Below, piece after piece: positions 23,245 through 63,652 of a stretch of DNA of 64,000 nt; the first letter of the stretch is position 1, and each line of letters opens with the position of its first letter. The stretch is from IMG/VR virus record IMGVR_UViG_3300021959_006017, positions 172,752 through 236,751 of that record; one strand, written 5' to 3'. A program made the translations under genes and the position numbers. The notes beneath the pieces were generated by a model that ran no database searches, was not told the DNA's origin, and was given only the letters and a program-made list of their open reading frames with translations.

Positions 23245-23259
23245 TCCGATAAGTACTGT

Positions 23260-24066
23260 ATGGACTTATATACAGTATTGGGCATCCCACGAACAGCATC
23301 TCCAGATGAAATAAAAAAGGCGTATAAGAAACAAGCCATGCGACACCATCCTGACAGAGGTGGTAATCCTGATGAGTTTCGTAAAGTGACTGAAGCATAT
23401 GACGTTCTAAGTAACAGTGATAAAAAGGCAGCATACGACAATCCACAACCAGGATTTAGTTTTAGATCACAGGACTTTGCACAAGGAAATCCTTTCGAAG
23501 GTACACCTTTTGAAAGTATATTTAGGCAAAGGCAAACACCTCGTAATAGAGATGTTCAAATGCCTGTTAATGTTACACTAAGAGATATTGTAACAGGGAA
23601 TCGAGTTGCTATAAACTACCAACTTAGTACAGGTAGAATCGAAACTGTAACTATTGATATTCCACCTGGTGCAAAACACGGTGATCAAATACGTTACGAA
23701 GGATTAGGCGATGAAGGCAATAAAAATTATCCTAGAGGAAACTTAATAGTTCAAATAAGAGTTCGAAAACATCGAGATTGGGCTAGAGATGGAGATAACT
23801 TAACTACAAAAAAATCTGTAAATTTGTTTGACTTTTTAACAGGAGGTGTTATAATAGTTAATACAATAGATGAAAAAAGTGTTAAACTTAACATACCACC
23901 AGGCACTAAACCAGGCACAACATTTAGTATATCAGGATATGGCATTCCTAATATTAACACAAGAAAACCTGGTAACTTATACGTCAAACTTGAAGCAGAA
24001 ATGCCAAAGATAAAAGATGCAAAGTTACTTGAAGAAATAGAAGATTTAAAAAGGAAAATAGGGTAA
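23260..24066 (+). CDS. dnaJ: DnaJ-class co-chaperone (CbpA-like, no Zn finger)
   Basis: J-domain with HPD; C-terminal substrate-binding domain. Confidence 0.9.
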   Translation: MDLYTVLGIPRTASPDEIKKAYKKQAMRHHPDRGGNPDEFRKVTEAYDVLSNSDKKAAYDNPQPGFSFRSQDFAQGNPFEGTPFESIFRQRQTPRNRDVQMPVNVTLRDIVTGNRVAINYQLSTGRIETVTIDIPPGAKHGDQIRYEGLGDEGNKNYPRGNLIVQIRVRKHRDWARDGDNLTTKKSVNLFDFLTGGVIIVNTIDEKSVKLNIPPGTKPGTTFSISGYGIPNINTRKPGNLYVKLEAEMPKIKDAKLLEEIEDLKRKIG

Positions 24067-24070
24067 AATA

Positions 24071-26320
24071 ATGGTAGAACCATCAAAGGATTTACAACTG
24101 GTTTTTGACAAAGCTATCAAAGATGCACAGAAGTTGCGTCACGAATATGTTACACTTGAACATATGATGTTTGCTATGATGTGTGAAGATAACTTTGTTA
24201 AGTTATTAGAAATGTATGGTGCAGATATTGATTATATCAAAGCCAACCTCGAACATCATTTAAAAACAAACAGCGATGATATTATTCTCCCCGAGGATAT
24301 TAAAAAATACAAGCCAAAGAAAACACAGGGTGTAGAACGTGCTTTGAATAGAGCATTTACACAGGTTCTTTTTGCAGGGCGTAGCCATATTGAGTTAAAA
24401 GATCTTTTGCTTAGTATTCTACATGAGAAGAAAAGTATTAGTGCTTACATCTTAGAAAAAGGTGGCGTTGGAAAAGATAAATTCAGTGACTTTGTAAACA
24501 ACGAAGTAGATGAAACACTACTGGAAGATCCTGAACTAACTAACGAAATGCGTAGAGCTATTAAGAGCTTTACAACTAACTTAAACGATCAAGTAAAACG
24601 TGGCAAGGTTGATCCTATTATTGGACGGGCTGACGAACTAGAAAGCCTTTGTTTGGCATTAGGTCGTCGAAGCAAAAATAATGTGCTAATGGTAGGTGAT
24701 CCGGGTGTTGGTAAAACTGCTATTGCAGAAGGACTTGCGTTTAATATCGAACAAGGTAATGTTCCAAGTTTCCTCAAAGAGTATAAAGTCTACAATCTAG
24801 ACATTGGTGCTATGCTTGCTGGTTCAAAATACCGCGGTGACTTTGAAGAACGTTTTAAACTTGTACTAAACGGACTTATCCGTGAAGGCAAGACTATTAT
24901 GTTTATCGACGAAGCACATATGATGAATGGTGCAGGTGCAGGCGGCAGTGGCAACTCAAACGATCTTGCTAATATGCTCAAGCCGGCACTAGCAAAAGGT
25001 GATCTAAAAGTTGTTGCTTCGACTACTTGGGAAGAGTTCCGCAAGTACTTTGAAAAAGATCGTGCGCTGATGCGTCGATTCCAGCGTGTAACTATTGGGG
25101 AACCTTCAAAAGAAACAACATCAGACATTCTAAGAGGTTTACGCAAGTACTATGAAGACTACCATGGAACAACTATTACTGATGACGCTATTGATGCGGC
25201 TATTAAACTAAGCGTTAAGTACCAAAGCGATAAGAAACTGCCAGACAAGGCTATTGACTTGATCGATGTTGCTTGTGCTAGATTTAAAGTTAACGATGAC
25301 GAAAACGAAGAAAAAACTGTAACTGAAGATAGTATCTTTTTTGAGCTTTCAAAAATGCTAAACTTGCCTACAGAACAAGTAGCACAGCGTGAATCAGAAA
25401 ACCTACAACATCTTGAAGACAATCTCAAGAAAGTTGTGTATGGACAAGACGATGCTATTGAAAGTATTGTTGATAAGATTCTTGTTAGCCAAGCAGGACT
25501 TAAACCAGATGATAAACCAGTAGGTGCATTTGTGTTTATGGGTCCAACAGGCACAGGTAAAACTGAAACTGCTAAACAGCTTGCAAATCAACTGGGTGTT
25601 AAACTTGTACGATTTGATATGAGTGAATACATGGAGAAACATAGTGTTGCAAAACTTATTGGCTCACCTCCAGGTTATGTAGGACACGAAGAAAACGCAG
25701 GTCAGTTGATTACTAAACTACAAGAGTCTCCTAACTGTGTACTCCTATTGGATGAGATCGAAAAAGCACACCCTGATGTTGCGCAGATTCTACTACAGAT
25801 TATGGACAACGGCTTGGTTACAGGCTCAAACGGTAAGGAAGCAGATGCACGTAACTGTACACTTATCCTTACAACTAACCTAGGTGCAGCACAAGCTGAA
25901 AAAGGTAGCATTGGTTTTGGTGATGACGAAGACTTTGGTTACGAAGATACAGAGTTTAAAAAGTATTTTGCTCCAGAGTTCCGCAATAGACTTGACGGTG
26001 TTATTACGTTTGCTAAACTTGGCAAAGAAGTAATGATGAAGATTGTTGGCAAGTTCCTTGTTGAACTTAAAGATATGGTCAAAGACAAAGGTATTGCTAT
26101 CGAAGTAACAGATGACGCACTTGACTATTTGGTAGACAAAGGTTTTGATCCTAAAAACGGTGCTCGTCCGCTACAACGTGTGATTGACAAAGACATTAAA
26201 CGTCCTCTTTCAAGACAGATGTTATTTGGTGATCTAAAAAATGGTGGCAAAGTAACAATCGATGTTAAAGATGACGAAGTAGTTCTTTCTGTAGAGGAAC
26301 TTGCAGTTGAAATATTATAA
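24071..26320 (+). CDS. clpA: ClpA AAA+ unfoldase
   Basis: Clp N domain; two AAA modules (GDPGVGKT, GPTGTGKT); IGF loop; no ClpB middle domain. Confidence 0.92.
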   Translation: MVEPSKDLQLVFDKAIKDAQKLRHEYVTLEHMMFAMMCEDNFVKLLEMYGADIDYIKANLEHHLKTNSDDIILPEDIKKYKPKKTQGVERALNRAFTQVLFAGRSHIELKDLLLSILHEKKSISAYILEKGGVGKDKFSDFVNNEVDETLLEDPELTNEMRRAIKSFTTNLNDQVKRGKVDPIIGRADELESLCLALGRRSKNNVLMVGDPGVGKTAIAEGLAFNIEQGNVPSFLKEYKVYNLDIGAMLAGSKYRGDFEERFKLVLNGLIREGKTIMFIDEAHMMNGAGAGGSGNSNDLANMLKPALAKGDLKVVASTTWEEFRKYFEKDRALMRRFQRVTIGEPSKETTSDILRGLRKYYEDYHGTTITDDAIDAAIKLSVKYQSDKKLPDKAIDLIDVACARFKVNDDENEEKTVTEDSIFFELSKMLNLPTEQVAQRESENLQHLEDNLKKVVYGQDDAIESIVDKILVSQAGLKPDDKPVGAFVFMGPTGTGKTETAKQLANQLGVKLVRFDMSEYMEKHSVAKLIGSPPGYVGHEENAGQLITKLQESPNCVLLLDEIEKAHPDVAQILLQIMDNGLVTGSNGKEADARNCTLILTTNLGAAQAEKGSIGFGDDEDFGYEDTEFKKYFAPEFRNRLDGVITFAKLGKEVMMKIVGKFLVELKDMVKDKGIAIEVTDDALDYLVDKGFDPKNGARPLQRVIDKDIKRPLSRQMLFGDLKNGGKVTIDVKDDEVVLSVEELAVEIL

Positions 26321-27005
26321 AACACAAAAACTTTTCTACGGCAAGTACTTGTATAAGGTTTACTTTTACAACGAACTAAATGGCTTCTTTAGAACAGAGT
26401 TCCAGAAAAAAGGAACTCTGAGCTATGCTAGAGAAAAAATAGATCAACTTACAGAATACTATAGACAGGGAATGCCTATGCAAACACCTATCTATAGAAC
26501 ATTTAAACATATTGATGAAGAAACTTATTTAGATGCACGGTTTTTATACGCTACGCTAATACGAAGCAAAGAAGAATACCGTGTTAGAGTTGAAAGTTGC
26601 AACAGAATAAGTATTTTTTCAAACGATGAAAAGTTCATTGACAAGACCGCCAACGGTGTAAGGACTCGATTAGTAGAAGTTCATAAACCTGATGATGTTG
26701 TTAAAGATGAAATACTTGCAAATAAAAACATTATTGTATCACCTAACCCAGTATATTGGCCTATTAAAGTAACACTAGGTAAAAACCGTAGAGATTACAG
26801 TGGTTTGGCTAACTGGATTGAAGCAAATCCAGACAAAGTAAAAATAGGCGAAGTTGCATTAAAATCGTTAAAATCACATGGCTTTGTAAGTGGCTACTAT
26901 TTGTTTGTAAAAACTGACAAAATATTAAATCTTATCAATATAATGATAGGCGATAATATACGCCGTATAGATCAGATTGTTTATAAAGCAGATTTAGATA
27001 AATAG
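26301..27005 (+). CDS. Hypothetical protein
   Basis: 234-aa ORF; start uncertain. Confidence 0.6.
   Translation: MQLKYYKTQKLFYGKYLYKVYFYNELNGFFRTEFQKKGTLSYAREKIDQLTEYYRQGMPMQTPIYRTFKHIDEETYLDARFLYATLIRSKEEYRVRVESCNRISIFSNDEKFIDKTANGVRTRLVEVHKPDDVVKDEILANKNIIVSPNPVYWPIKVTLGKNRRDYSGLANWIEANPDKVKIGEVALKSLKSHGFVSGYYLFVKTDKILNLINIMIGDNIRRIDQIVYKADLDK
26997..27004 (+). promoter_or_regulatory. Late-type promoter GATAAATA, 5 nt before ATG
   Basis: GATAAATA-GTTAT-ATG; heads the 27-35 kb cluster. Confidence 0.6.
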
Positions 27006-27009
27006 TTAT

Positions 27010-27378
27010 ATGCCGAGTAATAGTGAAACAATATTAACACAAAACGTACATCCAGGAGATAGTCAAACAGAAACTATCACAGGAGATGCAGCCAAGGGCG
27101 ATGGATATTATGGACGTTCCGACGGGTTCCATACAGTTCAGTATGATCTAGATAACTTTCTAGGAACTGTTATTGTCCAAGGCACATTGGCAACTACCCC
27201 TACAGCAGATGATTGGTTTGATATAACTGATACCGAACACGTAAGCACATCAAATGACAGTTCAAGTTCAACTAGTGATGGTGGATTTGTTTACAACTTT
27301 ACCGGTAACTACGTATGGGTAAGGGTATATGTTGAGTATACAGACGGCGCAGTAAACTCAGTAAAGCTAAATCACTAA
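27010..27378 (+). CDS. Hypothetical beta-rich (virion?) protein
   Basis: GDGYYGRSDGFHTVQY...NFTGNYVWVR. Confidence 0.6.
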   Translation: MPSNSETILTQNVHPGDSQTETITGDAAKGDGYYGRSDGFHTVQYDLDNFLGTVIVQGTLATTPTADDWFDITDTEHVSTSNDSSSSTSDGGFVYNFTGNYVWVRVYVEYTDGAVNSVKLNH

Positions 27379-27387
27379 GGACACATA

Positions 27388-27957
27388 ATGGAACACTTTG
27401 TAAACATAGTAATGGAAAAGAATGATAACCTAACTGAAAGCCTAGATGAAAGTATCTTTCCAGGCAATATTGTTACAGAATCAGAACAAGGTGCTACTGT
27501 TATTCAAATACCTTTGCCTCGTCATCTAAGCGAACAAGAATCAGATGAATATGCTAACAGACTAGCAAACTATATGTTTGAAAATGGCTATGACGATTTT
27601 GACATTGAAATAAGTTCAGATGAAGAACTTGATGAAATAGAAGAAACATATGACAGTGATGAGTTTTTTGAAAACTATGGTGTTATGTGGTTCAACGAAG
27701 ATGATGAAATGGACGAGGCAGAATATCAAGGACGTAAAGTTAAGCTAGGCAAGCCAATGCGTGGCGATGTTAAAAAGTTTAAAGTATACGTTAAGGATCC
27801 AAAGACTAAGAACGTTAAAAAAGTAAACTTTGGCGATCCTGACATGAAGATTAAAAAATCAAATCCGGCACGTAGACGTTCATTCCGTGCTAGACACAAC
27901 TGTGATAACCCAGGTCCACGTACTAAGGCACGTTACTGGTCATGTAGGAAATGGTAA
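27388..27957 (+). CDS. Acidic leader plus basic C-terminal module (putative internal head protein)
   Basis: Acidic half ends MDE|AEYQGRKVKL...RRSFRARHNC...YWSCRKW. Confidence 0.65.
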   Translation: MEHFVNIVMEKNDNLTESLDESIFPGNIVTESEQGATVIQIPLPRHLSEQESDEYANRLANYMFENGYDDFDIEISSDEELDEIEETYDSDEFFENYGVMWFNEDDEMDEAEYQGRKVKLGKPMRGDVKKFKVYVKDPKTKNVKKVNFGDPDMKIKKSNPARRRSFRARHNCDNPGPRTKARYWSCRKW

Positions 27958-27958
27958 T

Positions 27959-28285
27959 ATGCGTATTGACGAGTTTGCACCACGAGTAGATAATAGCTTA
28001 CCCTATGATGTAGTAGACGATGTAAAATCATATATGATAAACGATAAGGATTTTTATCGTAGATCTCTATATCCAGCAATGTGTAAGTTACAAGATCAAA
28101 TGAAAAGTGGAAAAATGTCACCACTTACACTTGCTCCTGTAATAGATAAAGCATGTGCAGGATATTGTTCAAAGTTTAATATTCCAAAAGAACCTAAAGA
28201 CCTGTTGGATAAGTCAGAAAAAGTAGAACTTATGCAGCGTCTTATAGCAGATGAAAGAGAGAACTTAGAAAAAGGAGAGTTTTGA
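27959..28285 (+). CDS. Hypothetical protein (MRIDEF start)
   Basis: Start reassigned to ATG 27959 after the upstream stop. Confidence 0.6.
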   Translation: MRIDEFAPRVDNSLPYDVVDDVKSYMINDKDFYRRSLYPAMCKLQDQMKSGKMSPLTLAPVIDKACAGYCSKFNIPKEPKDLLDKSEKVELMQRLIADERENLEKGEF

Positions 28286-29271: not shown

Positions 29272-29272
29272 A

Positions 29273-31660: not shown

Positions 31661-31672
31661 GGTAAATACAAT

Positions 31673-32020
31673 ATGAAGATGAAAGAACTATTAACAGAAG
31701 AAGAGTTTAAGGATGTACATAGTAGTACACTTCCTCATGCAAGTTATTATCCGGAAATGCCTGCAAGTAGTCCTTACTACGCATACCGTTTCGGAATGGG
31801 CATGGCGGATCATACTACTTTTCATCCCAACGGACCATCAAAAAACTCAGCAGTTATAGTTCAGTATTCAAAAGGGGAAGAAGAAATAGTCGCCGCAACA
31901 GAAAAGAAACTAGGAAAGTTTGGTAAAAAGACCTTAGCAGATGGTGGAAGTAACGAACCAGAAGGCACAAACAAAACCAGTCCTGTTGCAAAGAAAAAGA
32001 AAAACAAATACGGTGTATAA
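31673..32020 (+). CDS. Putative internal head protein
   Basis: MKMKELLTEE leader; YYAYRFG; basic KKKKNKYGV end. Confidence 0.6.
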   Translation: MKMKELLTEEEFKDVHSSTLPHASYYPEMPASSPYYAYRFGMGMADHTTFHPNGPSKNSAVIVQYSKGEEEIVAATEKKLGKFGKKTLADGGSNEPEGTNKTSPVAKKKKNKYGV

Positions 32021-32022
32021 CT

Positions 32023-37011: not shown

Positions 37012-37020
37012 TGTTATATT
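36992..37020 (+). promoter_or_regulatory. Sigma70 promoter for DNA polymerase
   Basis: TTGACA-N17-TATATT. Confidence 0.65.
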
Positions 37021-37083
37021 AATAATAACGCCGCATAGGCATGTAGAAGGTTAAGTTGGCCACAAGCAACGTAGGAGAAACAT

Positions 37084-39753
37084 TTGAGTTACGTAGACGC
37101 ATTCTTTGATCGTGATCAAGATATTATTCGAGTAGTCGAACGCAGAGATGGAAAGCGACATTTCCACGAATACCAAGCAAAATATACGTTTTACTACGAA
37201 GACCCGAGAGGCAAGTACAAAAGTGTGTACGGAGATCCTTTGACTCGTGTCGTATGTAAAAACACAAAAGACTTTCGCAAAGAAGTTGCTATTAACAAAG
37301 GCAAAAACTTGTTTGAAAGCGATATCAATCCAATATTCCAATGTCTAAGTGAAAACTATCTCAATCAAGACGCACCTAAACTAAACATTGCGTTCTTCGA
37401 TATTGAAACAGACTTTGATCCAGAACGTGGATTTGCTGATCCAGCAGATCCCTTTATGCCTATTACAAGTATCTCGGTATACTTGCAATGGATGGAGACA
37501 ATGATTTGTTTAGCAGTTCCACCTAAGACACTTACAATGGACGAAGCTAAAAAAGAACTTGAAGGCATTGAAAATGTAATGCTGTTTGAAAAAGAAAGTG
37601 ACATGATTGACACTTTCTTGACACTGATTGAAGATGCTGATATACTATCAGGTTGGAACAGTGAAGGTTATGATATTCCGTATACTGTAAATAGAACAAG
37701 TCGTGTACTAAGCAAAGATGACACAAGACGTTTTTGTTTGTGGGGACAACTTCCTAAGAAACGTGAATATGAAAAGTATGGCAAATCAGCTGTTACCTTT
37801 GACCTAATAGGCAGAGTGCATTTAGATAGTTTGGAATTATATCGTAAATACACATATGAAGAAAGACATACATATAGACTTGATGCCATTGGCGAAATCG
37901 AAGTTGGGGAGAATAAAGTTCCTTATGAAGGCACTTTGGACCAGTTGTACAACAATGACTTTAGAAAGTTCATCGAATACAACATACAAGATACCGCACT
38001 ACTGGACAAGCTGGACAAAAAACTAAGATTTATTGACCTAAGTAATGAGCTGGCTCATGCAAATACGGTTTTGCTACAGACCACTATGGGTGCTGTTGCT
38101 GTTACAGAGCAAGCTATTATTAACGAAGCACATCATAGAGGACTACAAGTTCCTAATCGTCCAAGACGTGATGACGAAAATACACAAGCCGCAGGTGCTT
38201 ATGTTGCATTTCCGAAAAAAGGCTTACACAAGTATATTGGTTCAATGGACTTGAACTCACTGTATCCGTCGGTGATTCGTGCGCTCAACATGGCTCCAGA
38301 AACTATTGTAGGACAACTTCGTCCTGAGATTTCAGATGCCCGTGTACACGAAGATATGACGCTGAAGAAAAAGAGCTTTGCAGGCAGTTGGGAAGGACGT
38401 TTCAATGTTGAAGAATACGATATGGTTATGGAAAAGCGCAAAGACGTTGCACTAACTATCGACTGGGAAGATGGACGTTCAGATGTACTAAGTGGTGCAG
38501 AGATTCATCAACTTATATTCGACAGTAATATGCCATGGATGCTAAGTGCAAACGGCACAATATTTACAACAGAGTTTGAAGGAGTTATTCCTGGTATTCT
38601 AAAGAGGTGGTATGCAGAACGAAAAGATCTACAGAAGATGCTCAAGAAGGCAAAAGACGCTGGCAATGAAGCGGAGATTGCATTTTGGGACAAACGACAA
38701 CTTGTTAAAAAGATTAATCTTAACTCTCTTTATGGGGCCATTCTTAATCCTGGTTGCAGATTTTTTGACAAACGTATAGGACAGTCAACTACACTTACTG
38801 GTAGACAGATTGTTAAGCATATGAGTGCAGAAGTAAACAAAGTTATCACAGGCGAATATGATCACGTAGGTAAAAGTGTTATCTATGGCGACACTGACTC
38901 TGTGTACTTTAGTGCGTGGCCTGTGCTTAAAGATGATGTAGAAGCAGGACGTCTTGATTGGAACATTGACAAGTGTATTACACTTTATGACCAAGTAGCA
39001 GAACAAGCAAATACAACATTTACAGACTTTATGGCAAAAGCATTTCACTGTCCAAAGAGTCGTTCAGATGTTATTGCGGCAGGTAGAGAGATTGTTGCAC
39101 AGTCAGGTTTGTATATTACTAAGAAGCGTTATGCGGCTCTTGTTATCGACTTAGAAGGCTTTAGAGCAGACACAGATGGCAAGCCAGGCAAAGTAAAAGC
39201 AATGGGCTTGGACTTGCGTAGATCAGACACACCTGTGTTCATGCAAGAGTTTCTAAGTGAACTATTACTTATGGTTCTTACTGACAAGCCTCAAGAACAA
39301 GTATTAGAACGTATTACAGAGTTCCGTAAAGAGTTTGAAGAACGTCCAGGACATGAAAAAGGTTCGCCTAAACGTGCAAACAAGATTGGACACTATCAGC
39401 GTCTTGAGCAGAAACAAGGTAAAGCAAATATGCCTGGACATGTAAGAGCAAGCATTAACTGGAACACACTAAAACGTATGAATGGTGACAAGTACTCGCA
39501 AGAGATTGTAGACGGTATGAAAGTTATTGTTTGCAAGCTCAAGCAGAATCCGCTGGGCTATACAAGTGTTGCATATCCGACAGATGAGTTGCGGTTGCCA
39601 GAGTGGTTTAAAGAACTGCCATTTGACGATGCAGCTATGGCTGAAACTATTATTGATAATAAGTTAGACAACTTAATCGGTGTGCTTGACTATCCATTAG
39701 AGGATACAAAACAACATAATACATTTAACAGTTTGTTTGACTTTGGAGATTAG
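37084..39753 (+). CDS. Family B DNA polymerase (gp43-like)
   Basis: Exo FDIETD; DLNSLYPS, KINLNSLYG, YGDTDS, KKRY; TTG start with SD GGAG. Confidence 0.97.
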   Translation: MSYVDAFFDRDQDIIRVVERRDGKRHFHEYQAKYTFYYEDPRGKYKSVYGDPLTRVVCKNTKDFRKEVAINKGKNLFESDINPIFQCLSENYLNQDAPKLNIAFFDIETDFDPERGFADPADPFMPITSISVYLQWMETMICLAVPPKTLTMDEAKKELEGIENVMLFEKESDMIDTFLTLIEDADILSGWNSEGYDIPYTVNRTSRVLSKDDTRRFCLWGQLPKKREYEKYGKSAVTFDLIGRVHLDSLELYRKYTYEERHTYRLDAIGEIEVGENKVPYEGTLDQLYNNDFRKFIEYNIQDTALLDKLDKKLRFIDLSNELAHANTVLLQTTMGAVAVTEQAIINEAHHRGLQVPNRPRRDDENTQAAGAYVAFPKKGLHKYIGSMDLNSLYPSVIRALNMAPETIVGQLRPEISDARVHEDMTLKKKSFAGSWEGRFNVEEYDMVMEKRKDVALTIDWEDGRSDVLSGAEIHQLIFDSNMPWMLSANGTIFTTEFEGVIPGILKRWYAERKDLQKMLKKAKDAGNEAEIAFWDKRQLVKKINLNSLYGAILNPGCRFFDKRIGQSTTLTGRQIVKHMSAEVNKVITGEYDHVGKSVIYGDTDSVYFSAWPVLKDDVEAGRLDWNIDKCITLYDQVAEQANTTFTDFMAKAFHCPKSRSDVIAAGREIVAQSGLYITKKRYAALVIDLEGFRADTDGKPGKVKAMGLDLRRSDTPVFMQEFLSELLLMVLTDKPQEQVLERITEFRKEFEERPGHEKGSPKRANKIGHYQRLEQKQGKANMPGHVRASINWNTLKRMNGDKYSQEIVDGMKVIVCKLKQNPLGYTSVAYPTDELRLPEWFKELPFDDAAMAETIIDNKLDNLIGVLDYPLEDTKQHNTFNSLFDFGD

Positions 39754-40147
39754 TTATCTTTTTTGAATGTAAACTGATATTAATAAAATCACTAAGAAAC
39801 TCGAAATGGTTTGATAGGTCGTTAAAAAGCTCACCTGTAACTTGGCTGTAAGAGGTTTTACCTATGTTTTGGAAATATGATCTAGGAAGTCCTTTGTTAG
39901 ATCCAAAAGACGGAAACACACCAGAAACAAAAAGGCAAGTATCACCAAGTTCTTTTGCATTTGATCTATTGTTGATTTTTAAATATGCTTCTGCAAAAGA
40001 GTTTTCAGGATGCCAGTTAGGTTTATCTATGTGTACTGCAAGTACCATAACAACATAATGCTCAAGATGCACCGGCAACTCATAGCCCGATGTTTCCTGA
40101 GCTTCTCTAACTATACCAAAGAAGGCATTAGTAAAAGCATCGTTCAT
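39725..40147 (-). CDS. Hypothetical protein, antisense orientation
   Basis: KELGDTCLFVSGVFP; GATAAATA ends 4 nt before ATG 40147. Confidence 0.6.
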   Translation of the reverse strand: MNDAFTNAFFGIVREAQETSGYELPVHLEHYVVMVLAVHIDKPNWHPENSFAEAYLKINNRSNAKELGDTCLFVSGVFPSFGSNKGLPRSYFQNIGKTSYSQVTGELFNDLSNHFEFLSDFINISLHSKKITNLQSQTNC

Positions 40148-40161
40148 AAAGTATTTATCGG

Positions 40162-55726: not shown

Positions 55727-55734
55727 GATAAATA
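55727..55734 (+). promoter_or_regulatory. Late-type promoter GATAAATA
   Basis: Intergenic octamer. Confidence 0.6.
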
Positions 55735-55763
55735 TATACGTAGTTAATAAGGATTACGTATAT

Positions 55764-56472: not shown

Positions 56473-56496
56473 TGAAAATGCAAGAGGGAATCAAAA

Positions 56497-57363: not shown

Positions 57364-57366
57364 GGG

Positions 57367-57405
57367 TTGACAAACAATCTAATGATGCTATACTATATGT
57401 ATAGT
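57367..57405 (+). promoter_or_regulatory. Sigma70 promoter with the same palindrome ACTATATGTATAGT
   Basis: TTGACA-N16-TATACT with TG extension. Confidence 0.7.
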
Positions 57406-57442
57406 TAGAAATAAGCACTGATGACTAAGAAGGGTAATACAA

Positions 57443-58528: not shown

Positions 58529-58533
58529 TGTAC

Positions 58534-58570
58534 AAAAGAGTGGGTTCTTTTGAGCCCACTCTTTTTTTTT
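58534..58570 (+). terminator. Rho-independent (bidirectional-type) terminator
   Basis: AAAAGAGTGGGTTC-TTTT-GAGCCCACTCTTTTTTTTT. Confidence 0.9.
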
Positions 58571-58574
58571 ATGG

Positions 58575-58602
58575 TTGACAAATCCTGTAAATAATGTATA
58601 AT
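58575..58602 (+). promoter_or_regulatory. Sigma70 promoter
   Basis: TTGACA-N16-TATAAT; TAAATA in the spacer. Confidence 0.7.
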
Positions 58603-58635
58603 ATAAGTATAAAGTAAGATAGAGGACATAGCACA

Positions 58636-59937
58636 ATGAGCGATATGAGTAAAACAAGTTGGACTCCAGACCCCAACATTACTCCTGAACAACTTGACGA
58701 AATGCGTGTAGAAGTACTTGACCGCATTATTGTTGCACGAGTAGGTTTGCTACTACGTCATCCTTTCTTCGGTAACATGGCAACACGACTGCGTATTTTA
58801 TCTGCAGACGACTGGTGCCCTACTGCCGCTGTAGACGGACGTAACCTTTATTTCAACACACAGTTTTTTAATGCAATGTCAAACAAAGAAATCGAGTTTG
58901 TTATTGCACACGAAATCCTGCACTGCGTATTTGACCACTTAGATCGTAGAGAAGACCGTGATCCTATGATCTTCAACATTAGTGCAGACTATATTGTAAA
59001 CAACACACTAGTACGTGATCGTATTGGCGAAATGCCCAAACTAGTAAATTGTTTCCAAGACTTTAAATACGAAGGTTGGACTTCAGAAGAAGTTTACGAT
59101 GACATCTTTAAAAAATATGATGAAGAACAACTTAAACAACTAGGCGAACTGCTTGATGAGCATCTTGACTGGGGTGATGATGGTGATGGTAACGAAGGCG
59201 GTAGCGAAGGCCAAGAAGGCGAAGATTCAAACGGTAACAAAACTAGCAAGAAGCGTCCTAGTTATTCTAAAGAAGATTTACGCAAGATTCGCGATGAAGT
59301 AAAAGAAAGTATGCTTAGTGCCGCACAATCGGCAGGCGCAGGTAACGTTCCTGCAGGTGTTGAGCGCATGATTAAAGAGCTTACAGAACCTAAAATGAAC
59401 TGGCGTGAAATACTACGTCAACAAATCCAATCAACAATCCGTAACGACTTTACATTTAGTCGTCCATCACGCAAAGGCTGGCACACTGGTGCTATTTTGC
59501 CTGGTATGAACTTTGACACAACTATTGATATTTGTGTTGCACTTGATATGAGTGGTAGTATTGGTAACCCGCAGGCTGCTGACTTCTTAGGTGAAATCAA
59601 AGGCATTATGGACGAGTTTAAAGACTACAATATCAAGATTTGGTGTTTTGATACTAAAGTTTATAACGAGCAAGACTTTAGTGCAGACGGCGGTGAAGAT
59701 CTTATGGACTACGAAATCATGGGCGGTGGCGGCACCGACTTTATGGCTAACTGGCACTACATGAAAGAAAACGATATTGTTCCTAAAAAGTTCATTATGT
59801 TCACAGACGGCTATGCTTGGGATAGTTGGGGTGAAGATGATTACTGTGAAACAATCTTTGTTATTCACTCACACCATGACAAAAATGTACAGGCACCATT
59901 TGGTATAACTGCACACTACGAAGAAAATGTTGCATAA
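58636..59937 (+). CDS. HExxH metallopeptidase-like plus VWA domain protein (DUF2201-like)
   Basis: AHEILH; DMSGS MIDAS motif; GGGGTDF; FTDG. Confidence 0.85.
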   Translation: MSDMSKTSWTPDPNITPEQLDEMRVEVLDRIIVARVGLLLRHPFFGNMATRLRILSADDWCPTAAVDGRNLYFNTQFFNAMSNKEIEFVIAHEILHCVFDHLDRREDRDPMIFNISADYIVNNTLVRDRIGEMPKLVNCFQDFKYEGWTSEEVYDDIFKKYDEEQLKQLGELLDEHLDWGDDGDGNEGGSEGQEGEDSNGNKTSKKRPSYSKEDLRKIRDEVKESMLSAAQSAGAGNVPAGVERMIKELTEPKMNWREILRQQIQSTIRNDFTFSRPSRKGWHTGAILPGMNFDTTIDICVALDMSGSIGNPQAADFLGEIKGIMDEFKDYNIKIWCFDTKVYNEQDFSADGGEDLMDYEIMGGGGTDFMANWHYMKENDIVPKKFIMFTDGYAWDSWGEDDYCETIFVIHSHHDKNVQAPFGITAHYEENVA

Positions 59938-60208
59938 GAAAGAACCAAATCCTTTAAATGTATTCAAAGTGAGGCAAGTAAAGTCTGCTCCGCCTCACTT
60001 TGACTATATAAACCTACCACAAAAATACAACTTAGAAGAAAGTCTAGCTAAATGGATTAAAAAGAACTGCAAACACAGATTCTATTTAGGTAAAAATATT
60101 GTATTAGACAATGAAAGAAAGATGGTAAATGTTCTTACTGTAGGGTTTGAACAAAACAAAGACATGAGTTATTTCATGTTGGCTTGTCCACATTTGAAAT
60201 ATAATTAA
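59927..60208 (+). CDS. Hypothetical protein
   Basis: VGFE...YFML. Confidence 0.6.
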   Translation: MLHKKEPNPLNVFKVRQVKSAPPHFDYINLPQKYNLEESLAKWIKKNCKHRFYLGKNIVLDNERKMVNVLTVGFEQNKDMSYFMLACPHLKYN

Positions 60209-60245
60209 ATAAAGTACGCATATATATTAGTAAGGAGTTAAAAAT

Positions 60246-60494
60246 ATGAGCGACGAAAAGAAAGTTTCTGAAACAACTGCGCCAGAAGCGGCAACAGAAG
60301 CACCTGCGGTACCGCAACAACAAGGTCCAGATTTAACTGTACAAGATTTGCAAAATCTTAAAAGTATTATCGATGTTGCAAGTCAGCGCGGCGCATTTAA
60401 GCCAAATGAAATGATGACAGTTGGTCAGACATATTCAAAACTAGAAATGTTCTTAGAAGCAGTATCTAAGGCACAACCACAACAAGGAGCATAA
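60246..60494 (+). CDS. Hypothetical protein
   Basis: SD AAGGAG; IIDVASQRGAFK. Confidence 0.65.
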   Translation: MSDEKKVSETTAPEAATEAPAVPQQQGPDLTVQDLQNLKSIIDVASQRGAFKPNEMMTVGQTYSKLEMFLEAVSKAQPQQGA

Positions 60495-60495
60495 A

Positions 60496-61110
60496 ATGGC
60501 ATTTAAACATGTAGGCAGAATTGCCTCAAACAGAAGAAAGGTTGTTGTAGCATACAGAGTAGTTCCGGATGAACCAGAAAACTGTGTTGTTGTACAAACA
60601 GAAAACCTTTCTGCAGACGAGCATGATGCACTTATTAAAGCAGTCGAATCAGCTGCTGGACAAGAAGCAGAAGAGTTTGCGGTAGCAATGGCTCGTGCAT
60701 ATCTTCCAGACGGGCGTAATATGCTTGCTGGATTCCATACTACAGGAAAGATGCGCAAAGTACCGTCAGCAGACATTGAAATGACACCAAACGGTAACAC
60801 TACAATTAATCTTGCAGAGCTTAACAAGATGATTGCAGAGCAAAAAGGTGTCACGGTAGGCGATCTTGCAATGCGTACAACACCAGCAACTGATACTCCT
60901 GTAGAAACAGAAGTAGATCCTGTTGCACAGTATACAACAGAGGCTACACCAGCACCTGCTACAGATGGCGTACTTACTGACGAACAACTAGCGGCACAAT
61001 ATCGGTCACAAGCTGATGCTTTATTTAAAGAAGCAAAGGCTCTAAGAGAACAAGCAGAAGAACTCGTTCCTACTAAGAGAAAAAAGAAGACCGAAGAAAG
61101 TGTCCAGTAA
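60496..61110 (+). CDS. Hypothetical protein
   Basis: SD AAGGAG; MAFKHVGR. Confidence 0.65.
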   Translation: MAFKHVGRIASNRRKVVVAYRVVPDEPENCVVVQTENLSADEHDALIKAVESAAGQEAEEFAVAMARAYLPDGRNMLAGFHTTGKMRKVPSADIEMTPNGNTTINLAELNKMIAEQKGVTVGDLAMRTTPATDTPVETEVDPVAQYTTEATPAPATDGVLTDEQLAAQYRSQADALFKEAKALREQAEELVPTKRKKKTEESVQ

Positions 61111-61411
61111 TGGTAAACTACCTCCCGACGTAGTAAGACACTGGCCTGAAATATTTAGTGATGTTGAAATACAGACTATTCCTGTACAATATCTAGTGTC
61201 TATACGTGTGGAATTTAATGACGGTAAAATATGGGAAATAGATTTAGATCGCACTAAGTTAACAGGCGATGAAACTGTAGAAGACAGTTTAACATCGTTT
61301 TTTGACGAATATAGCGAGTCTATTTCCAATATTGACTTTCGCTTGGACACCCAAAAAGTCATCAAAGATGTTAAAGAACGTACTAGACTATTTATGAAAA
61401 AACGTAAATAG
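61100..61411 (+). CDS. Hypothetical protein
   Basis: GTG start; HWPEIF. Confidence 0.6.
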   Translation: MSSNGKLPPDVVRHWPEIFSDVEIQTIPVQYLVSIRVEFNDGKIWEIDLDRTKLTGDETVEDSLTSFFDEYSESISNIDFRLDTQKVIKDVKERTRLFMKKRK

Positions 61412-61420
61412 TCAATATGA

Positions 61421-61428
61421 GATAAATA
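61421..61428 (+). promoter_or_regulatory. Late-type promoter GATAAATA
   Basis: Intergenic octamer before the fibre gene. Confidence 0.65.
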
Positions 61429-61458
61429 TATATAAGAGAATATTCTAGGAGTATTATA

Positions 61459-62679
61459 ATGGCTTTACGTCTAAGACGCGGTACAGACGCACAACGACAA
61501 CTTATAACGCCGAGCGAGGGCGAGTTAATCTATGTTACAGACACCACAGAACTATATGTAGGTGATGGAACCACATTAGGTGGTATTAGAATATCAGGAG
61601 AAGTTGTTGATACACTTAATCAACTAGATGACGTTGATGCCGCATTACCGCAAGACGGTGACGTTCTAGTTTACGATAGTGCAACAGGCGATTGGGTAGC
61701 AGGTGAGCTTCCATTAGGTGATTTATCAGACGTAGAAGTTAGCGGAGTACTAGACGGACAAGTTCTTGCATTTGATGCAGCAACTACTTCTTGGGTTCCT
61801 GCAAACAATGTAGGAGGTGGAGATACTACCTTTAGCGGTGATTTAGTAGGTAGTGTATTTGCAGACGATTCTACTATAATGGTAGATGCAGTATCTGCTC
61901 GATTCTTCGGAAGACTCGAAGGCACTACAGTCGGACAACATATTGGTAATGTAGACGGAGATCTTTCAGGTAATGTTAATGGTACAGTATTTGGAGAACT
62001 TTCGGGGTCTGTATTCGGCGATGATTCAAGTTTAATCGTAGATGGACCAACAGGATTTATAAATTCTCGTAAAATAGATGCAGGAGCATCTAGATTACAC
62101 CTACAAGGTGATACTTTGGGTATTGTTGCAAATGACGGAAATACTGTACAGATTGGCGGAACAGACTACGACGGAACATTCAAAAATAATACTTTAAGCA
62201 TAGCTAGAAATGGAACTAGTGGCATTGCTTTTAGTATAGAAACATATCACGAAAGTGATAATGTTGCTGATTTTAGAAGTGTTAAATATAGAGGAACAAC
62301 TAGTGCTCCTGCAACATATCAAAACGGTGACAGATTACTAGAGTTTGTAGCTTCAGGCTACGATGGTTCAACCATTTCAGACGGCGGATTTATTAAATTT
62401 ATTGCAGATGGTTCAGCAGCAAATAGTTTAATACCAGCTAAAGTTCAACTTCAAGTTCCAAACGCCACAGCAACTGCCGGTATTACATATGAAGGTAACA
62501 AATACGGCACATGGTCTGCTTCACAGTTAATGTTAACTCCTTTAGATGCAGAACCAACAGACGTTGCAGAAGGAATGATTGCTGTTGCTGATAGAGCAAC
62601 TTGGGATCCTGCTGCAAAAGGTTCGGGCGGAAGTTATGTTGTTTATTACGACGGTTCAGCTTGGAACGCAATGTCCTAA
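61459..62679 (+). CDS. Tail fibre-like virion protein
   Basis: MALRLRRGT...GELIYVTDT N-terminus; LSDV repeats; GSVFxDDS repeats; shared C-terminal domain. Confidence 0.75.
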   Translation: MALRLRRGTDAQRQLITPSEGELIYVTDTTELYVGDGTTLGGIRISGEVVDTLNQLDDVDAALPQDGDVLVYDSATGDWVAGELPLGDLSDVEVSGVLDGQVLAFDAATTSWVPANNVGGGDTTFSGDLVGSVFADDSTIMVDAVSARFFGRLEGTTVGQHIGNVDGDLSGNVNGTVFGELSGSVFGDDSSLIVDGPTGFINSRKIDAGASRLHLQGDTLGIVANDGNTVQIGGTDYDGTFKNNTLSIARNGTSGIAFSIETYHESDNVADFRSVKYRGTTSAPATYQNGDRLLEFVASGYDGSTISDGGFIKFIADGSAANSLIPAKVQLQVPNATATAGITYEGNKYGTWSASQLMLTPLDAEPTDVAEGMIAVADRATWDPAAKGSGGSYVVYYDGSAWNAMS

Positions 62680-62698
62680 TACTTAAATAAGTATTTTA

Positions 62699-63652
62699 AT
62701 GAAATATGTAAATCTTCCAGAACACATATGGTGGTCTGTTAATAATGTTCCATATGCAAACTTTAAGAGTTTTTTAGATAAATCAGAAAAACTAGAAAAG
62801 TTTGATTATCAAATATTAAATAATATTTCTATTGAATCTAAATCCTTTAGAGAAGAATGCATCAGTGCTGCATCTCTTCTTCCAGATCTACATCTAGCAA
62901 TACCTGTAAGCGGAAGTGATAGTGAAATAGTAGCACGTTCTGCTCATGCTAACGGAAAAAAGGCTACTATATATTACGAAGACTATCCTTGGGCTGATTC
63001 TAGTTATAAAGAAAAAAGTATGAAACTAGCATATGATCTTGGTTATGATTGGATTGGGTTCGAAGCCGACTACGACGAATGCTTAGAACGAATGAAATAT
63101 TACAGTGTAAAACTAGGTAATATGAGTAGAGGGTTCCTTATTAGCATGGGTATGTTTGATAAGATTCCAAATGAGCAGTTTATTGTAGGAGGACTAGGCG
63201 AACTTGAAAAAGATGGCTGGATATATCGTAAAACTATAGAAAACTGTATAGGTGAAGACTGGGACAAAGAAGTAGTTATACCGTGTCCTCCTACAGAAAT
63301 GATTTGGTGGTTATACGGTGAAGAAACAGGAAAACAAGGTATGTGGACTTTTTTTAATAGCACCCTACCTTTAATAAAAAGTCAAGCAACACACCCTTTG
63401 CTAAGTTATGGTAAACAAAACAAAGGAGTGTGTAATACTATTGCTTTAAAAAACAGCGAATGGCCTGAACTTATATTCAAATCAAAAACAGATCATTTTC
63501 ATCCATCAGATGATTTTTATTTAGAAATTTATTATAAAATGGAGGAAAATATGTATAAACATTATCCTCGAGAGTTGTTTAGTTTAGTTAAGAATGGATT
63601 TTGTGGATTTGTTAATTACACAAAAATATTTGACACTTCCTCAGTTTTATAG
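62699..63652 (+). CDS. Hypothetical protein, possible degenerate PP-loop fold
   Basis: IPVSGSDSEIV resembles SGGxDS. Confidence 0.5.
   Translation: MKYVNLPEHIWWSVNNVPYANFKSFLDKSEKLEKFDYQILNNISIESKSFREECISAASLLPDLHLAIPVSGSDSEIVARSAHANGKKATIYYEDYPWADSSYKEKSMKLAYDLGYDWIGFEADYDECLERMKYYSVKLGNMSRGFLISMGMFDKIPNEQFIVGGLGELEKDGWIYRKTIENCIGEDWDKEVVIPCPPTEMIWWLYGEETGKQGMWTFFNSTLPLIKSQATHPLLSYGKQNKGVCNTIALKNSEWPELIFKSKTDHFHPSDDFYLEIYYKMEENMYKHYPRELFSLVKNGFCGFVNYTKIFDTSSVL

What the first reader, a model, noticed from the sequence alone, without database searches (positions are those of the whole stretch)
23248..62701. Late promoter variant GATAA(A/G)TA producing apparently leaderless mRNAs
Seen: the octamer recurs at gene boundaries (4394, 7949, 10929, 19388, 26997, 55727, 61421; - strand 19351 and 40159), differing from T4 TATAAATA at position 1 and often reusing the upstream TAA stop. 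In five cases ATG follows only 4-5 nt later: 23248 (dnaJ), 26997, 31661, 40159(-) and 62686. Sigma70 promoters at 10341 and 63630 likewise end 6 nt before ATG. Inference: transcription starts at or next to the ATG, so the phage uses leaderless translation, which could keep these mRNAs translated when SD-led initiation is impaired.
Basis: partly seen in the sequence, partly recalled or inferred. Interest (0 to 1): 0.6.

Follow-up and report, generated by a model that had tools for sequence, protein, structure and literature searches.

The report
Late promoters that abut start codons
In this uncultured giant phage and hundreds of relatives, the T4-style late promoter box often sits 4-5 bases before the start codon, so tail-tube, terminase and chaperone genes are probably expressed from mRNAs with no leader or ribosome-binding site, though no transcript 5' end has been mapped.

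Summary
The window is the last 64 kb of a 236,751-bp IMG/VR contig, about 67% of a roughly 350-kb T4-superfamily jumbo phage.

- **Motif:** (G/N)ATAAATA is 9-fold enriched upstream of genes and has no -35 partner. It precedes structural genes.
- **Sigma factor:** 5 of 5 large relatives encode a gp55-like sigma. This partial contig lacks it.
- **Spacing:** box-to-start distance is bimodal, at 4-5 nt or 18-30 nt with a Shine-Dalgarno (SD) sequence.
- **Frequency:** about 5% of ORF first starts carry NNTAA(A/G)TA-N4-5-ATG, against 0.45% of internal ATGs (p about 1e-8). A complete 357-kb relative gives the same result.
- **Consistency with a start site at the A:** the start codon is always ATG, and position -1 is almost always a pyrimidine.
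- **Conservation:** the arrangement is kept in every orthologue set with enough relatives. These are tail tube 37/37 loci, w27010 56/56, dnaJ 55/55, and TerL and two structural genes 32/33.
- **Controls:** T4, PA5oct, Atu_ph07, Phosso, 121Q and a Vibrio phage show no such peak.
- **Sigma70-type cases:** two promoters at 10341 and 63630 also abut ATG, and the first is conserved in 52 relatives.

No RNA data were available, so start sites are inferred from T4 geometry.

The parts
23248..23255 (+). Late-type box GATAAGTA, 4 nt before ATG 23260 of the DnaJ-like gene (23260-24066). No SD.
   Evidence: Pfam finds the J domain from residue 2. 55 distinct orthologue upstreams carry (G/A)(A/C)TAAGTA or GGTAAATA at d=5 (51) or d=4 (4). 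All use ATG and all have T or C at -1.
26997..27004 (+). Late-type box GATAAATA, 5 nt before ATG 27010 (gene 27010-27378, virion-structural-like). It overlaps the TAG stop of ORF 26301-27005.
   Evidence: 56 of 56 distinct orthologue upstreams keep the box at d=5, all with ATG.
31661..31668 (+). Box variant GGTAAATA, 4 nt before ATG 31673 (gene 31673-32020, unknown function).
   Evidence: ATG is the first start of the ORF. No independent orthologue was found, so conservation is untested.
40152..40159 (-). Late-type box GATAAATA, 4 nt before ATG at 40147 (gene 39725-40147, minus strand, unknown function).
   Evidence: The one independent orthologue (L200, 74% identity) has TATAAATA-N4-ATG.
62686..62693 (+). 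Box variant AATAAGTA, 5 nt before ATG 62699 (gene 62699-63652, unknown function). This is the weakest case.
   Evidence: first start, no SD. No orthologues were found.
10341..10369 (+). Sigma70-type promoter TTGACA-17-TAAAAT ending 6 nt before ATG 10376 (gene 10376-10933). Its -10 element contains the TAA stop of ORF 10130-10366.
   Evidence: 11/12 match. 52 distinct orthologue upstreams keep the arrangement, 50 at d=6. The synonymous sites CTT and GAC of the upstream ORF are invariant.
63630..63658 (+). Sigma70-type promoter TTGACA-17-TATAAT ending 6 nt before ATG 63665. The gene runs off the contig end.
   Evidence: 12/12 match. Conservation not tested.
4394..4401 (+). Late box GATAAATA with a leader. 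ATG 4423 is 21 nt downstream, SD aGGAa. Box-N5-GTAG.
7949..7956 (+). Late box with a leader. Its TAA is the stop of ORF 4423-7953. ATG 7980 is 23 nt downstream.
10929..10936 (+). Late box with a leader. Its TAA is the stop of ORF 10376-10933. ATG 10961 is 24 nt downstream, SD AAGGAG.
19388..19395 (+). Late box with a leader. ATG 19417 is 21 nt downstream (virion structural protein). It is back-to-back with the box at 19344-19351 (-).
   Evidence: Orthologues keep GATAAATAagtatA plus SD.
19344..19351 (-). Late box with a long 69-nt leader to ATG 19274 (gene 18552-19274, minus strand). Strong SD AAAGGAGGA.
   Evidence: Orthologues keep NNTAAATA-N5-GTAG 63-70 nt upstream of the ATG.
55727..55734 (+). 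Late box with a leader. ATG 55764 is 29 nt downstream.
61421..61428 (+). Late box with a leader. ATG 61459 is 30 nt downstream, SD AGGAG.
   Evidence: Orthologues at 25-44% identity keep (G/C/T)ATAAATA, a 30-40 nt leader and AGGAG.
1795..1802 (+). Further NATAAATA box with a leader: AATAAATA, ATG 1822. Similar sites at 20659 (ATG 20705), 22513 (ATG 22545) and 32360 (CATAAATA, ATG 32396).

Best explanation
(G/N)ATAAATA is the late promoter of this phage clade. It is a -10-type box read by host RNA polymerase carrying a phage gp55-like sigma, with no -35 element. I infer that transcription starts about 6 nt after the box, as in T4.

In roughly three quarters of these promoters the transcript has a 13-25-nt leader, occasionally longer, with an SD sequence. 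In the remaining quarter the A of the start codon sits at the predicted +1. That amounts to about 16-22 genes in the 236 kb, five of them in the window. Those mRNAs would begin with AUG and be translated without a leader or SD.

This class includes the tail tube, large terminase, several virion proteins, a DnaJ co-chaperone and a MazE-like/IF1 operon. A few sigma70-type promoters use the same design (10341, 63630).

Shown here: the motif, its placement, the bimodal spacing, the clade-wide conservation, the absence of SD, exclusive use of ATG, the pyrimidine at -1, and a gp55-like sigma in relatives.

Inferred: promoter activity, the exact start site, and leaderless translation.
For: 1. **Promoter identity.** GATAAATA is 9-fold enriched upstream of ORFs. 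Forty gene-linked NATAAATA sites show at most 0.1 bit of conservation from -45 to -1, so there is no -35 element. Downstream genes are tail tube, TerL and virion proteins. A gp55-family sigma is present in 5 of 5 large relatives, including a 100%-complete 357-kb genome (phrog_12791 E about 1e-79, phrog_234 E about 1e-23). An ATAAATA late motif was already predicted in the related phages CBB and GAP32 (PMC5259590).

2. **Geometry.** The T4 box lies about one helical turn upstream of the start site (PMC2988020). Spacing to the next start is bimodal: 4-5 nt (9 sites), one site between 6 and 17 nt, and 18-30 nt (26 sites). Leadered promoters often carry a pyrimidine-purine step at box+5/+6, for example box-N5-GTAG. 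That is the position of the A of ATG in the abutting class.

3. **Statistics.** NNTAA(A/G)TA-N4-5-ATG occurs at 16 of 313 ORF first starts against 7 of 1547 internal ATGs (odds ratio 11.9, p = 2e-8). In relative G001 the figures are 19 of 382 against 9 of 1951 (p = 1e-9). Position -1 is a pyrimidine in 15/16 and 18/19 abutting starts, against about 38% for SD genes.

4. **True starts.** The ATG is usually the first start of the ORF. Family profiles align from residues 1-5. Terminator hairpins lie immediately upstream of the box at the tail tube, TerL and g99693, leaving 12-13 nt to the ATG.

5. **Conservation of the abutting arrangement.**
- Tail tube: 37/37 loci at 41-100% identity.
- g28002(-): 10/10. 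g39792: 11/11. TerL: 11/12.
- dnaJ: 55/55. w27010: 56/56. All use ATG.
- The one TerL exception has TATAAATA with a 23-nt SD leader instead, which shows the two designs are interchangeable.

6. **Controls.** T4's 32 TATAAATA sites peak at d=21-29, with none at gene starts at d=4-5. Five cultured relatives show no excess over a reversed-pattern control. PA5oct has GATAAATA before its sheath and tube genes, but with SD leaders.
Against: - No transcript 5' end was seen. No RNA run was listed and the metagenome scan was uninformative.
- The sigma factor is not on this contig.
- No gp33 or gp45 homologue was detected in G000 or G001, so the T4 activation mechanism may differ and the start-site distance is assumed.
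- Several abutting genes follow an upstream ORF closely (w27010 4 nt after the stop, g39792 10 nt, dnaJ 15 nt). Termination-reinitiation on read-through transcripts could also translate them.
- The host is unknown, so the efficiency of leaderless initiation there cannot be judged.
- Cases 31661 and 62686 have no comparative support.
Confidence: 0.72

Rival explanations
1. The box is a late promoter elsewhere, but at the abutting sites the genes are translated from longer read-through transcripts. This would happen by SD-independent means: termination-reinitiation coupling, or ribosome loading on the unstructured A/U-rich box through protein S1. The 4-5-nt spacing would then reflect genome compaction, with the box doubling as stop codon and spacer.
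For: The box often overlaps the upstream stop codon (TGA, TAA or TAG registers) at 7949, 10929, 26997, g39780 and g36535. w27010, g39792 and dnaJ lie 4-15 nt after an upstream ORF with no terminator between.
Against: - The tail tube, TerL and g99693 have a terminator hairpin and T-run directly upstream of the box, so there is little read-through and no upstream ORF to couple to.
- Coupling does not require an exact 4-5-nt gap, a pyrimidine at -1, or a conserved TAAATA. All are kept at 37-64% protein identity.
- If the box is an active promoter, a transcript starting at or next to the ATG is produced anyway.
Confidence: 0.15
2. TAAATA-N4-5-AUG is an RNA-level signal rather than a promoter. It could be a binding or cleavage site for a phage or host factor that processes polycistronic late RNA just upstream of AUG, or that recruits ribosomes.
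For: Strict spacing to AUG would also suit a processing or recruitment signal. The clade encodes translation proteins IF1 and bS21.
Against: - The same box occurs 18-70 nt upstream of SD-led genes, where such a role makes no sense.
- It occurs in divergent back-to-back pairs typical of promoters (19344-19395; g28008-28027).
- It matches the T4 late box, and a gp55-like sigma is present in relatives.
- No RegB-like nuclease was found.
Confidence: 0.06
3. The pattern is chance or a compositional artefact of an AT-rich genome and of gene-start calling.
For: The window-only count of GATAARTA is not significant. Three GATAAGTA sites are intragenic. My refined start calls used the motif as a criterion.
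Against: - Tests independent of start calling give P = 4e-5 to 1e-9.
- A second genome replicates the result.
- More than 200 distinct orthologous upstream regions conserve it.
- T4 and five relatives show no peak.
Confidence: 0.02

Closest known systems
Phage T4 late promoters (TATAAATA, gp55 sigma with gp33 and the gp45 clamp)
   Same: An 8-bp A/T box at the -10 position, no -35 element, located upstream of virion genes. A gp55-family sigma is encoded by the clade.
   Different: Position 1 prefers G (G > A, C > T) and is loose in the abutting class. No gp33 or gp45 homologue was detected. T4's boxes all drive SD-led leaders with a distance peak of 21-29 nt and none at start codons. Here about a quarter abut ATG.
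Predicted ATAAATA late promoters of Rak2-like jumbo phages (CBB, GAP32; PMC5259590)
   Same: The same core motif before structural genes, in distant relatives of the same jumbo-phage assemblage. CBB has a gp55-like sigma, and gp33 and gp45 were not found there either.
   Different: That work reports the motif only and does not mention promoter-start codon abutment. 121Q, Atu_ph07, Phosso, Vibrio 2.275.O and PA5oct show no TAAATA-N4-5-ATG excess.
Leaderless middle and late transcripts of Thermus phages phiYS40 and Lalka27a
   Same: A phage that expresses much of its later programme from mRNAs starting at the initiator codon (PMC3594737; bioRxiv 10.64898/2026.04.20.719267).
   Different: Unrelated phages with different promoters (a TAGGGT-type -10). 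Their host phylum uses leaderless mRNAs routinely. There most transcripts are leaderless, whereas here a conserved minority is, and SD-led late genes coexist with it.
Lambda cI mRNA from PRM, and -10 boxes adjacent to ORFs in Deinococcus-Thermus (PMC10491246, PMC12340547)
   Same: A -10 element placed so that +1 is the A of AUG. There is a strict AUG requirement.
   Different: Those are sigma70/SigA promoters. The two sigma70-type cases in the window (10341, 63630) are of this kind. The late-box cases use a different sigma family.

Membership tests
T4-type late promoter | Conserved 8-bp (T/N)ATAAATA box | tested here: met
   GATAAATA is 9-fold enriched upstream of ORFs. It is conserved in orthologous upstream regions.
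T4-type late promoter | No -35 element | tested here: met
   Information content is at most 0.1 bit at every position from -45 to -1 in 40 gene-linked sites.
T4-type late promoter | gp55-family sigma factor encoded by the phage | tested here: inconclusive
   Absent from this 67%-complete contig. Present in 5 of 5 large relatives, including a complete genome. 34% identity to T4 gp55 over 97 residues.
T4-type late promoter | gp33 co-activator and gp45 sliding-clamp activator | tested here: not met
   phrog_254 and phrog_223 find nothing in G000 or the complete relative G001. Divergent homologues are not excluded.
T4-type late promoter | Drives late (virion) genes | tested here: met
   Tail tube, TerL, virion structural, baseplate and tail-fibre-like genes lie downstream. 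Timing itself is untested.
T4-type late promoter | Transcription starts about 6 nt downstream of the box | not testable with these tools
   No RNA run was listed.
Leaderless mRNA | 5' end at, or within a few nt of, the start codon | not testable with these tools
   Inferred from box geometry only. No reads were available.
Leaderless mRNA | No Shine-Dalgarno sequence and no room for one | tested here: met
   Only 4-5 nt of A/T-rich spacer separate the box from ATG. Terminators lie directly upstream in several cases.
Leaderless mRNA | AUG as initiator (GUG and UUG are poorly tolerated) | tested here: met
   All abutting starts are ATG, including 111 distinct orthologue sequences. There is no GTG at d=4-5. 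SD-led genes use TTG or GTG in about 9-11% of cases.
Leaderless mRNA | Start codon is the authentic N-terminus | tested here: met
   Family profiles align from residues 1-5, and the J domain starts at residue 2. The ATG is the first start of the ORF in most cases. N-terminal peptides are conserved.

The most novel reading that the evidence does not exclude
This clade has turned leaderless initiation into a dedicated late-expression channel. High-copy virion proteins are made from AUG-first mRNAs, and the phage tunes host ribosomes for them with its own initiation proteins. IF1 is co-transcribed behind a leaderless MazE-like gene from a late-type box, an arrangement conserved in G001. A bS21 homologue is expressed from a sigma70-type promoter. 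This would give a translation-level temporal switch layered on the gp55 transcriptional switch.
Probability: 0.1. Interest if true: 0.85.

Novelty: new variant of a known kind. Interest (0 to 1): 0.62.

Why it matters
T4-type late transcription is a textbook system, and its promoters have so far been described with SD-led leaders.

Here a large, widespread clade of uncultured aquatic jumbo phages has fixed a design in which the late box doubles as the whole 5' region of the gene. IMG/VR holds 470-590 related stretches for single marker genes. The design applies to abundant proteins such as the tail tube.

If confirmed, four things follow:
- Leaderless initiation can carry bulk virion production outside the phyla where it is usual.
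- Gene callers that require an SD will misplace these starts in such phages.
- The box-to-ATG rule gives a simple sequence signature for finding late genes in metagenomic giants.
- It gives a handle on what kind of translation apparatus the unknown host has.

Tried and rejected
- **RNA evidence.** The look-up of sequencing runs (kind rna) on a 10-kb stretch holding three abutting promoters listed no run.
- **Metagenome scan.** An 18-mer from the tail-tube 5' end gave 40 hits, none with a contig end at the ATG. Many are probably chance matches. One hit, L478, comes from a human-gut metagenome assembly and was not examined further.
- **Phage identity.** Megablast against known phages found nothing.
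- **gp55 on this contig.** Not found by the T4 protein or by two PHROG profiles. I explain this by incompleteness, since all large relatives have it.
- **RegB-like nuclease** as a reason to avoid SD sequences: not found.
- **IF3:** not found.
- **bS21 and IF1 as correlates of the trait.** Rejected as specific correlates. bS21 is also in Atu_ph07, Phosso, Vibrio 2.275.O and PA5oct. IF1 is also in Phosso. None of these shows the abutting pattern. Published structural work links the absence of bS21, not its presence, to easier leaderless initiation (PMC10491246).
- **Host inference from IF1.** Best hits are 58-75% identical and scattered across phyla, so this is unresolved.
- **Orthologues of w31673, w62699 and w63665.** None found beyond an identical contig.
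- **Literature.** Searches for leaderless late mRNAs in T4-like or jumbo phages found no prior description. The phiKZ dRNA-seq study found no leaderless transcripts, and AR9 leaders are 26-491 nt.
Full report
**What the window is.** The window is bases 172,752-236,751 of a 236,751-bp linear IMG/VR viral contig with 39% G+C. CheckV rates it 67% complete. Its family-B DNA polymerase (window 37084-39753) is 44-50% identical to those of giant myoviruses: Sinorhizobium phage Phosso, Agrobacterium phage Atu_ph07, a 349-kb Vibrio phage, and the 121Q group. Its tail tube is nearest to that of Pseudomonas phage PA5oct, at 29% identity. IMG/VR holds hundreds of much closer relatives. There are 472, 589 and 492 related stretches for three marker genes. 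One of them, G001, is a 357,559-bp contig rated 100% complete. The object is therefore about two thirds of a roughly 350-kb uncultured jumbo phage of the T4 superfamily. The host is unknown.

**Checking the observation.**
- The raw count in the window is unremarkable. There are 13 GATAARTA against 8.4 +/- 2.9 expected.
- Three GATAAGTA sites (13875-, 46809, 50199) lie inside genes and are probably chance.
- Two of the five 'abutting' cases differ from the stated octamer by one base: 31661 is GGTAAATA and 62686 is AATAAGTA.
- An unbiased 8-mer enrichment over the whole contig picks out two motif families upstream of ORFs.
  - One is GGTTGACAAA...TGCTATA(G/C)T, a sigma70-type presumably early promoter.
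  - The other is GATAAATA(C), with 20 of 28 copies within -80..+10 of an ORF start, a 9-fold enrichment.
- The stop-codon reuse is real. The TAA of the box ends the upstream ORF at 7949 and 10929, and a TAG overlaps the box at 26997. Elsewhere in the genome a TGA overlaps the first two bases.

**Is it a late promoter?** Four lines of evidence agree.
- Forty gene-linked NATAAATA sites show no conservation at all between -45 and -1 (at most 0.1 bit per position). There is only a weak G preference at box position 1 and C/T just after the box. That is the hallmark of T4 late promoters, described as an 8-bp TATA box about one helical turn upstream of the start site with no -35 (PMC2988020).
- The genes downstream are virion genes. 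They include tail tube, large terminase, several 'virion structural protein' families, a tail-fibre-like protein, and baseplate and tail genes in window 1-19,000.
- A gp55-family sigma is encoded by all five large related contigs tested, including the complete one. It is about 283 aa, with phrog_12791 E about 1e-79, phrog_234 E about 1e-23, and 34% identity to T4 gp55 over 97 residues. It is missing from this contig, most simply because a third of the genome is missing.
- The same ATAAATA core was already predicted as the late promoter of the related giants CBB and GAP32 (PMC5259590). I also see GATAAATA before the sheath and tube genes of PA5oct.

No gp33 or gp45 homologue was detected in G000 or G001. 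The CBB authors reported the same absence. The activation mechanism may therefore differ from T4's.

**The spacing.** This is the core of the finding.
- After GATAAATA (28 sites) an ATG follows at a gap of 3, 4, 5 or 6 nt in 2, 2, 6 and 1 cases. The d=4-5 total of 8 compares with 1.2 expected (P = 4e-5).
- For the loose core TAAATA (219 sites) the d=4-5 count is 25. The internal control gives 9.6 and Markov simulations give 10.5 +/- 3.0.
- The distance from NATAAATA to the next predicted gene start is bimodal. There are 9 sites at 4-5 nt, a single site between 6 and 17 nt, and 26 sites at 18-30 nt.
- A test that does not depend on my start-codon refinement uses only the first start codon of each ORF. 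NNTAA(A/G)TA-N4-5-ATG occurs at 16 of 313 ORFs against 7 of 1547 internal in-frame ATGs (odds ratio 11.9, p = 2e-8). In G001 the figures are 19 of 382 against 9 of 1951 (p = 1e-9). Several of the 'internal' hits are in fact true starts that have spurious upstream in-frame codons.
- The complete relative G001 reproduces the raw peak, with d4 = 9 and d5 = 21 against a background of 4.9 per offset.

**Properties of the abutting class.**
- There is no SD and no room for one.
- The initiator is always ATG. No GTG occurs at d=4-5, and none appears in 111 distinct orthologous sequences. SD-led genes in the same genomes use TTG or GTG in about 9-11% of cases.
- The base before the ATG is a pyrimidine in 15/16 (G000) and 18/19 (G001) abutting starts, and in 111/111 orthologue sequences. 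For SD-led genes the figure is about 38%. A pyrimidine at -1 and a purine at +1 is the usual start-site preference of bacterial RNA polymerase.
- Many leadered promoters of the same phage show the same step at the same distance from the box. Examples are box-N5-GTAG at 4394, 10929, 55727 and 19351(-), and GATAAATAagtat|A at 19388. Both are conserved in relatives.
- The ATGs are genuine N-termini. PHROG and Pfam profiles align from residues 1-5, and the J domain of the DnaJ-like protein starts at residue 2.
- At the tail tube, TerL and g99693, a terminator hairpin and T-run sit directly upstream of the box. Only 12-13 nt remain before the ATG.

**Conservation.**

| Gene | Relatives keeping the abutting arrangement | Protein identity |
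|---|---|---|
| Tail tube | 37/37 loci: terminator, then (G)ATAAATA or CTAAATA, N4-5, ATG | 41-100% |
| g28002(-) structural | 10/10 distinct upstreams | 60-100% |
| g39792 structural | 11/11 distinct upstreams | 57-95% |
| TerL | 11/12 distinct upstreams | 79-95% |
| w27010 | 56/56 distinct upstreams, all GATAAATA or CATAAATA at N5 | 37-64% |
| DnaJ-like (w23260) | 55/55 distinct upstreams, d=5 in 51 and d=4 in 4 | 39-78% |
| w40147(-) | 1 independent orthologue, TATAAATA-N4-ATG | 74% |

- The single TerL exception has TATAAATA followed by a 23-nt leader with AGGAG. A natural swap between the two designs at one gene is what one expects if the box is a promoter in both.
- At dnaJ the G-variant TAAGTA is itself conserved in 51 of the 55 upstreams. 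It is therefore a real variant at that gene, perhaps a weaker or differently timed promoter.
- w31673 and w62699 have no detectable orthologues in the fetched loci. Those two cases rest on the sequence alone.
- Leadered promoters are conserved too, with variable leader length: 61421, 19388 and 19351(-).

**Controls in other phages.**
- In T4 the 32 TATAAATA boxes give a single broad peak of ATG distances at 21-29 nt. None falls at d=4, and the one at d=5 is not a gene start.
- Whole-record pattern counts show no excess of TAAATA-N4-5-ATG over the reversed-pattern control. Observed against control: Atu_ph07 17 vs 26, Phosso 4 vs 2, Vibrio 2.275.O 6 vs 5, 121Q 6 vs 25, PA5oct 20 vs 30.
- The abutting design is therefore a derived feature of this uncultured clade, not of T4-like or Rak2-like phages in general.

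**Sigma70-type promoters.** Most of the roughly 55 TTGACA-N17-19-TANNNT promoters in the contig have 19-63-nt leaders.
- 10341-10369 scores 11/12 and 63630-63658 scores 12/12. Each ends 6 nt before ATG, which places the canonical +1 on the A.
- The first is conserved in 52 distinct relatives, with d=6 in 50 of them. It lies inside the last codons of the upstream ORF, yet the synonymous positions of CTT-GAC never vary. This indicates selection on the DNA rather than on the protein.
- Two more cases occur outside the window (g62916, g93750).

**Mechanism and rivals.** The best-supported reading is that host RNA polymerase with the phage gp55-like sigma starts about 6 nt after the box. About three quarters of late promoters give short SD-containing leaders, and about one quarter give mRNAs that begin with AUG.

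- **SD-independent translation from read-through transcripts.** This is the main rival. Translation would occur by termination-reinitiation or by loading on the A/U-rich box. It is plausible for w27010, g39792 and dnaJ, which closely follow an upstream ORF. It does not explain the terminator-preceded cases, the exact spacing, or the -1 pyrimidine. The two routes may also coexist.
- **An RNA-processing or ribosome-recruitment signal.** This is unlikely because the same box sits 18-70 nt upstream of SD-led genes and occurs in divergent back-to-back pairs.
- **Chance.** This is excluded by the controls.

I found nothing that supports this.
- There is no RegB-like nuclease and no IF3 homologue.
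- Most late genes still use an SD sequence.
- The phage does encode IF1 (G000:139103-139321) and a bS21 homologue (G000:121228-121479). The IF1 gene follows a 69-aa MazE/AbrB-like ORF that has its own GGTAAATA-N4-ATG, and this arrangement is conserved in G001.
- However, bS21 is also present in four cultured relatives that lack the abutting pattern, and IF1 is present in Phosso. Structural work on the lambda cI mRNA associates loss of bS21, not its gain, with easier leaderless initiation (PMC10491246).
- I therefore keep a link between these factors and the leaderless class only as a low-probability novel reading.

**Comparison with what is known.**
- The box belongs functionally with T4-type late promoters. 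Membership is incomplete because gp33 and gp45 were sought and not found, and the sigma is seen only in relatives.
- Leaderless later-phase transcripts are known in Thermus phages phiYS40 and Lalka27a. Single leaderless genes are known in lambda. ORF-adjacent -10 boxes are common in Deinococcus-Thermus.
- I found no report of gp55-type late promoters abutting start codons. phiKZ and AR9 transcript maps show no leaderless mRNAs.
- I rate this a new variant of a known kind. The motif is known, and the conserved clade-wide architecture and its inferred leaderless output are new.

**Limits.**
- No transcript data could be obtained, so start sites, timing and translation mode are inferences.
- The host is unresolved.
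- My gene calls are home-made, based on codon-usage log-odds and greedy selection.
One metagenome hit from a human-gut assembly (L478) was left unused.

Noticed in passing
G000:138907-139321 (outside the window; locus L275:1284-1698): A 69-aa MazE/AbrB-domain ORF (Pfam 26.3 bits) with its own GGTAAATA-N4-ATG is followed, with overlap, by a bona fide translation initiation factor IF1 gene (72 aa, PF01176, E = 2e-23). The same two-gene arrangement, with the box, is present in the complete relative G001.
   Followed up: partly
G000:121140-121479 (outside the window; locus L278): A phage-encoded ribosomal protein bS21 homologue (82 aa, TTG start, strong SD) lies behind a sigma70-type promoter with a 58-nt leader. 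bS21 is also present in G001, Atu_ph07, Phosso, Vibrio phage 2.275.O and PA5oct.
   Followed up: partly
window 37020-37083: Upstream of the DNA polymerase gene, relatives conserve a hairpin followed by GGTTAAGTTGGCCA(T/C/A)AAGCAACGAAGGAG and then the start codon, which is TTG here and ATG in most relatives. It may be a translational operator like the one T4 gp43 uses to repress its own mRNA.
   Followed up: no
window 19275-19343 (minus strand): The 69-nt leader between the late box at 19351(-) and ATG 19274 is conserved in length (63-70 nt). It contains repeated GTAGG/CCTAC-type complementary segments and a very strong SD (AAAGGAGGA). It may be a structured regulatory leader.
   Followed up: no
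G000:71,700-83,700, minus strand (outside the window): About 20 small genes each carry a near-identical module of GGTTGACAAA-N-TGCTATA(G/C)T, then gtatgtatagttagaa..., then GAGGGCA before ATG. This is a repeated early promoter and 5'-UTR cassette with an SD-like GAGGGC that does not fully match the usual anti-SD.
   Followed up: no
G000:36535-36570 and G000:161912-161945 (outside the window): In two places the ATG 5-6 nt after GATAAATA opens only a 5-6-codon mini-ORF. Its TGA stop overlaps the ATG of the real SD-led gene in an ATGA overlap. These may be leaderless upstream mini-ORFs coupled to the downstream gene.
   Followed up: no
window 23260-26320: A DnaJ-type co-chaperone (J domain plus DnaJ_C) is directly followed by a 749-aa ClpA/ClpB-like double-AAA+ protein (Clp_N, AAA_lid_9, AAA_2, ClpB_D2-small). 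This chaperone pair is conserved in more than 470 related viral contigs.
   Followed up: partly
window 19344-19395; G000:28008-28027: Late boxes occur as divergent back-to-back pairs 4-36 bp apart, driving genes on opposite strands. At G000:28008-28027 one arm abuts its ATG and the other has an SD leader. The pairing is conserved in relatives.
   Followed up: partly
L015 (IMG/VR relative), TerL upstream: One relative has replaced the abutting NNTAAATA-N4-5-ATG of the terminase gene with TATAAATA, a 23-nt leader with AGGAG, and a different N-terminal peptide. This is a natural switch between the two promoter-start designs.
   Followed up: no
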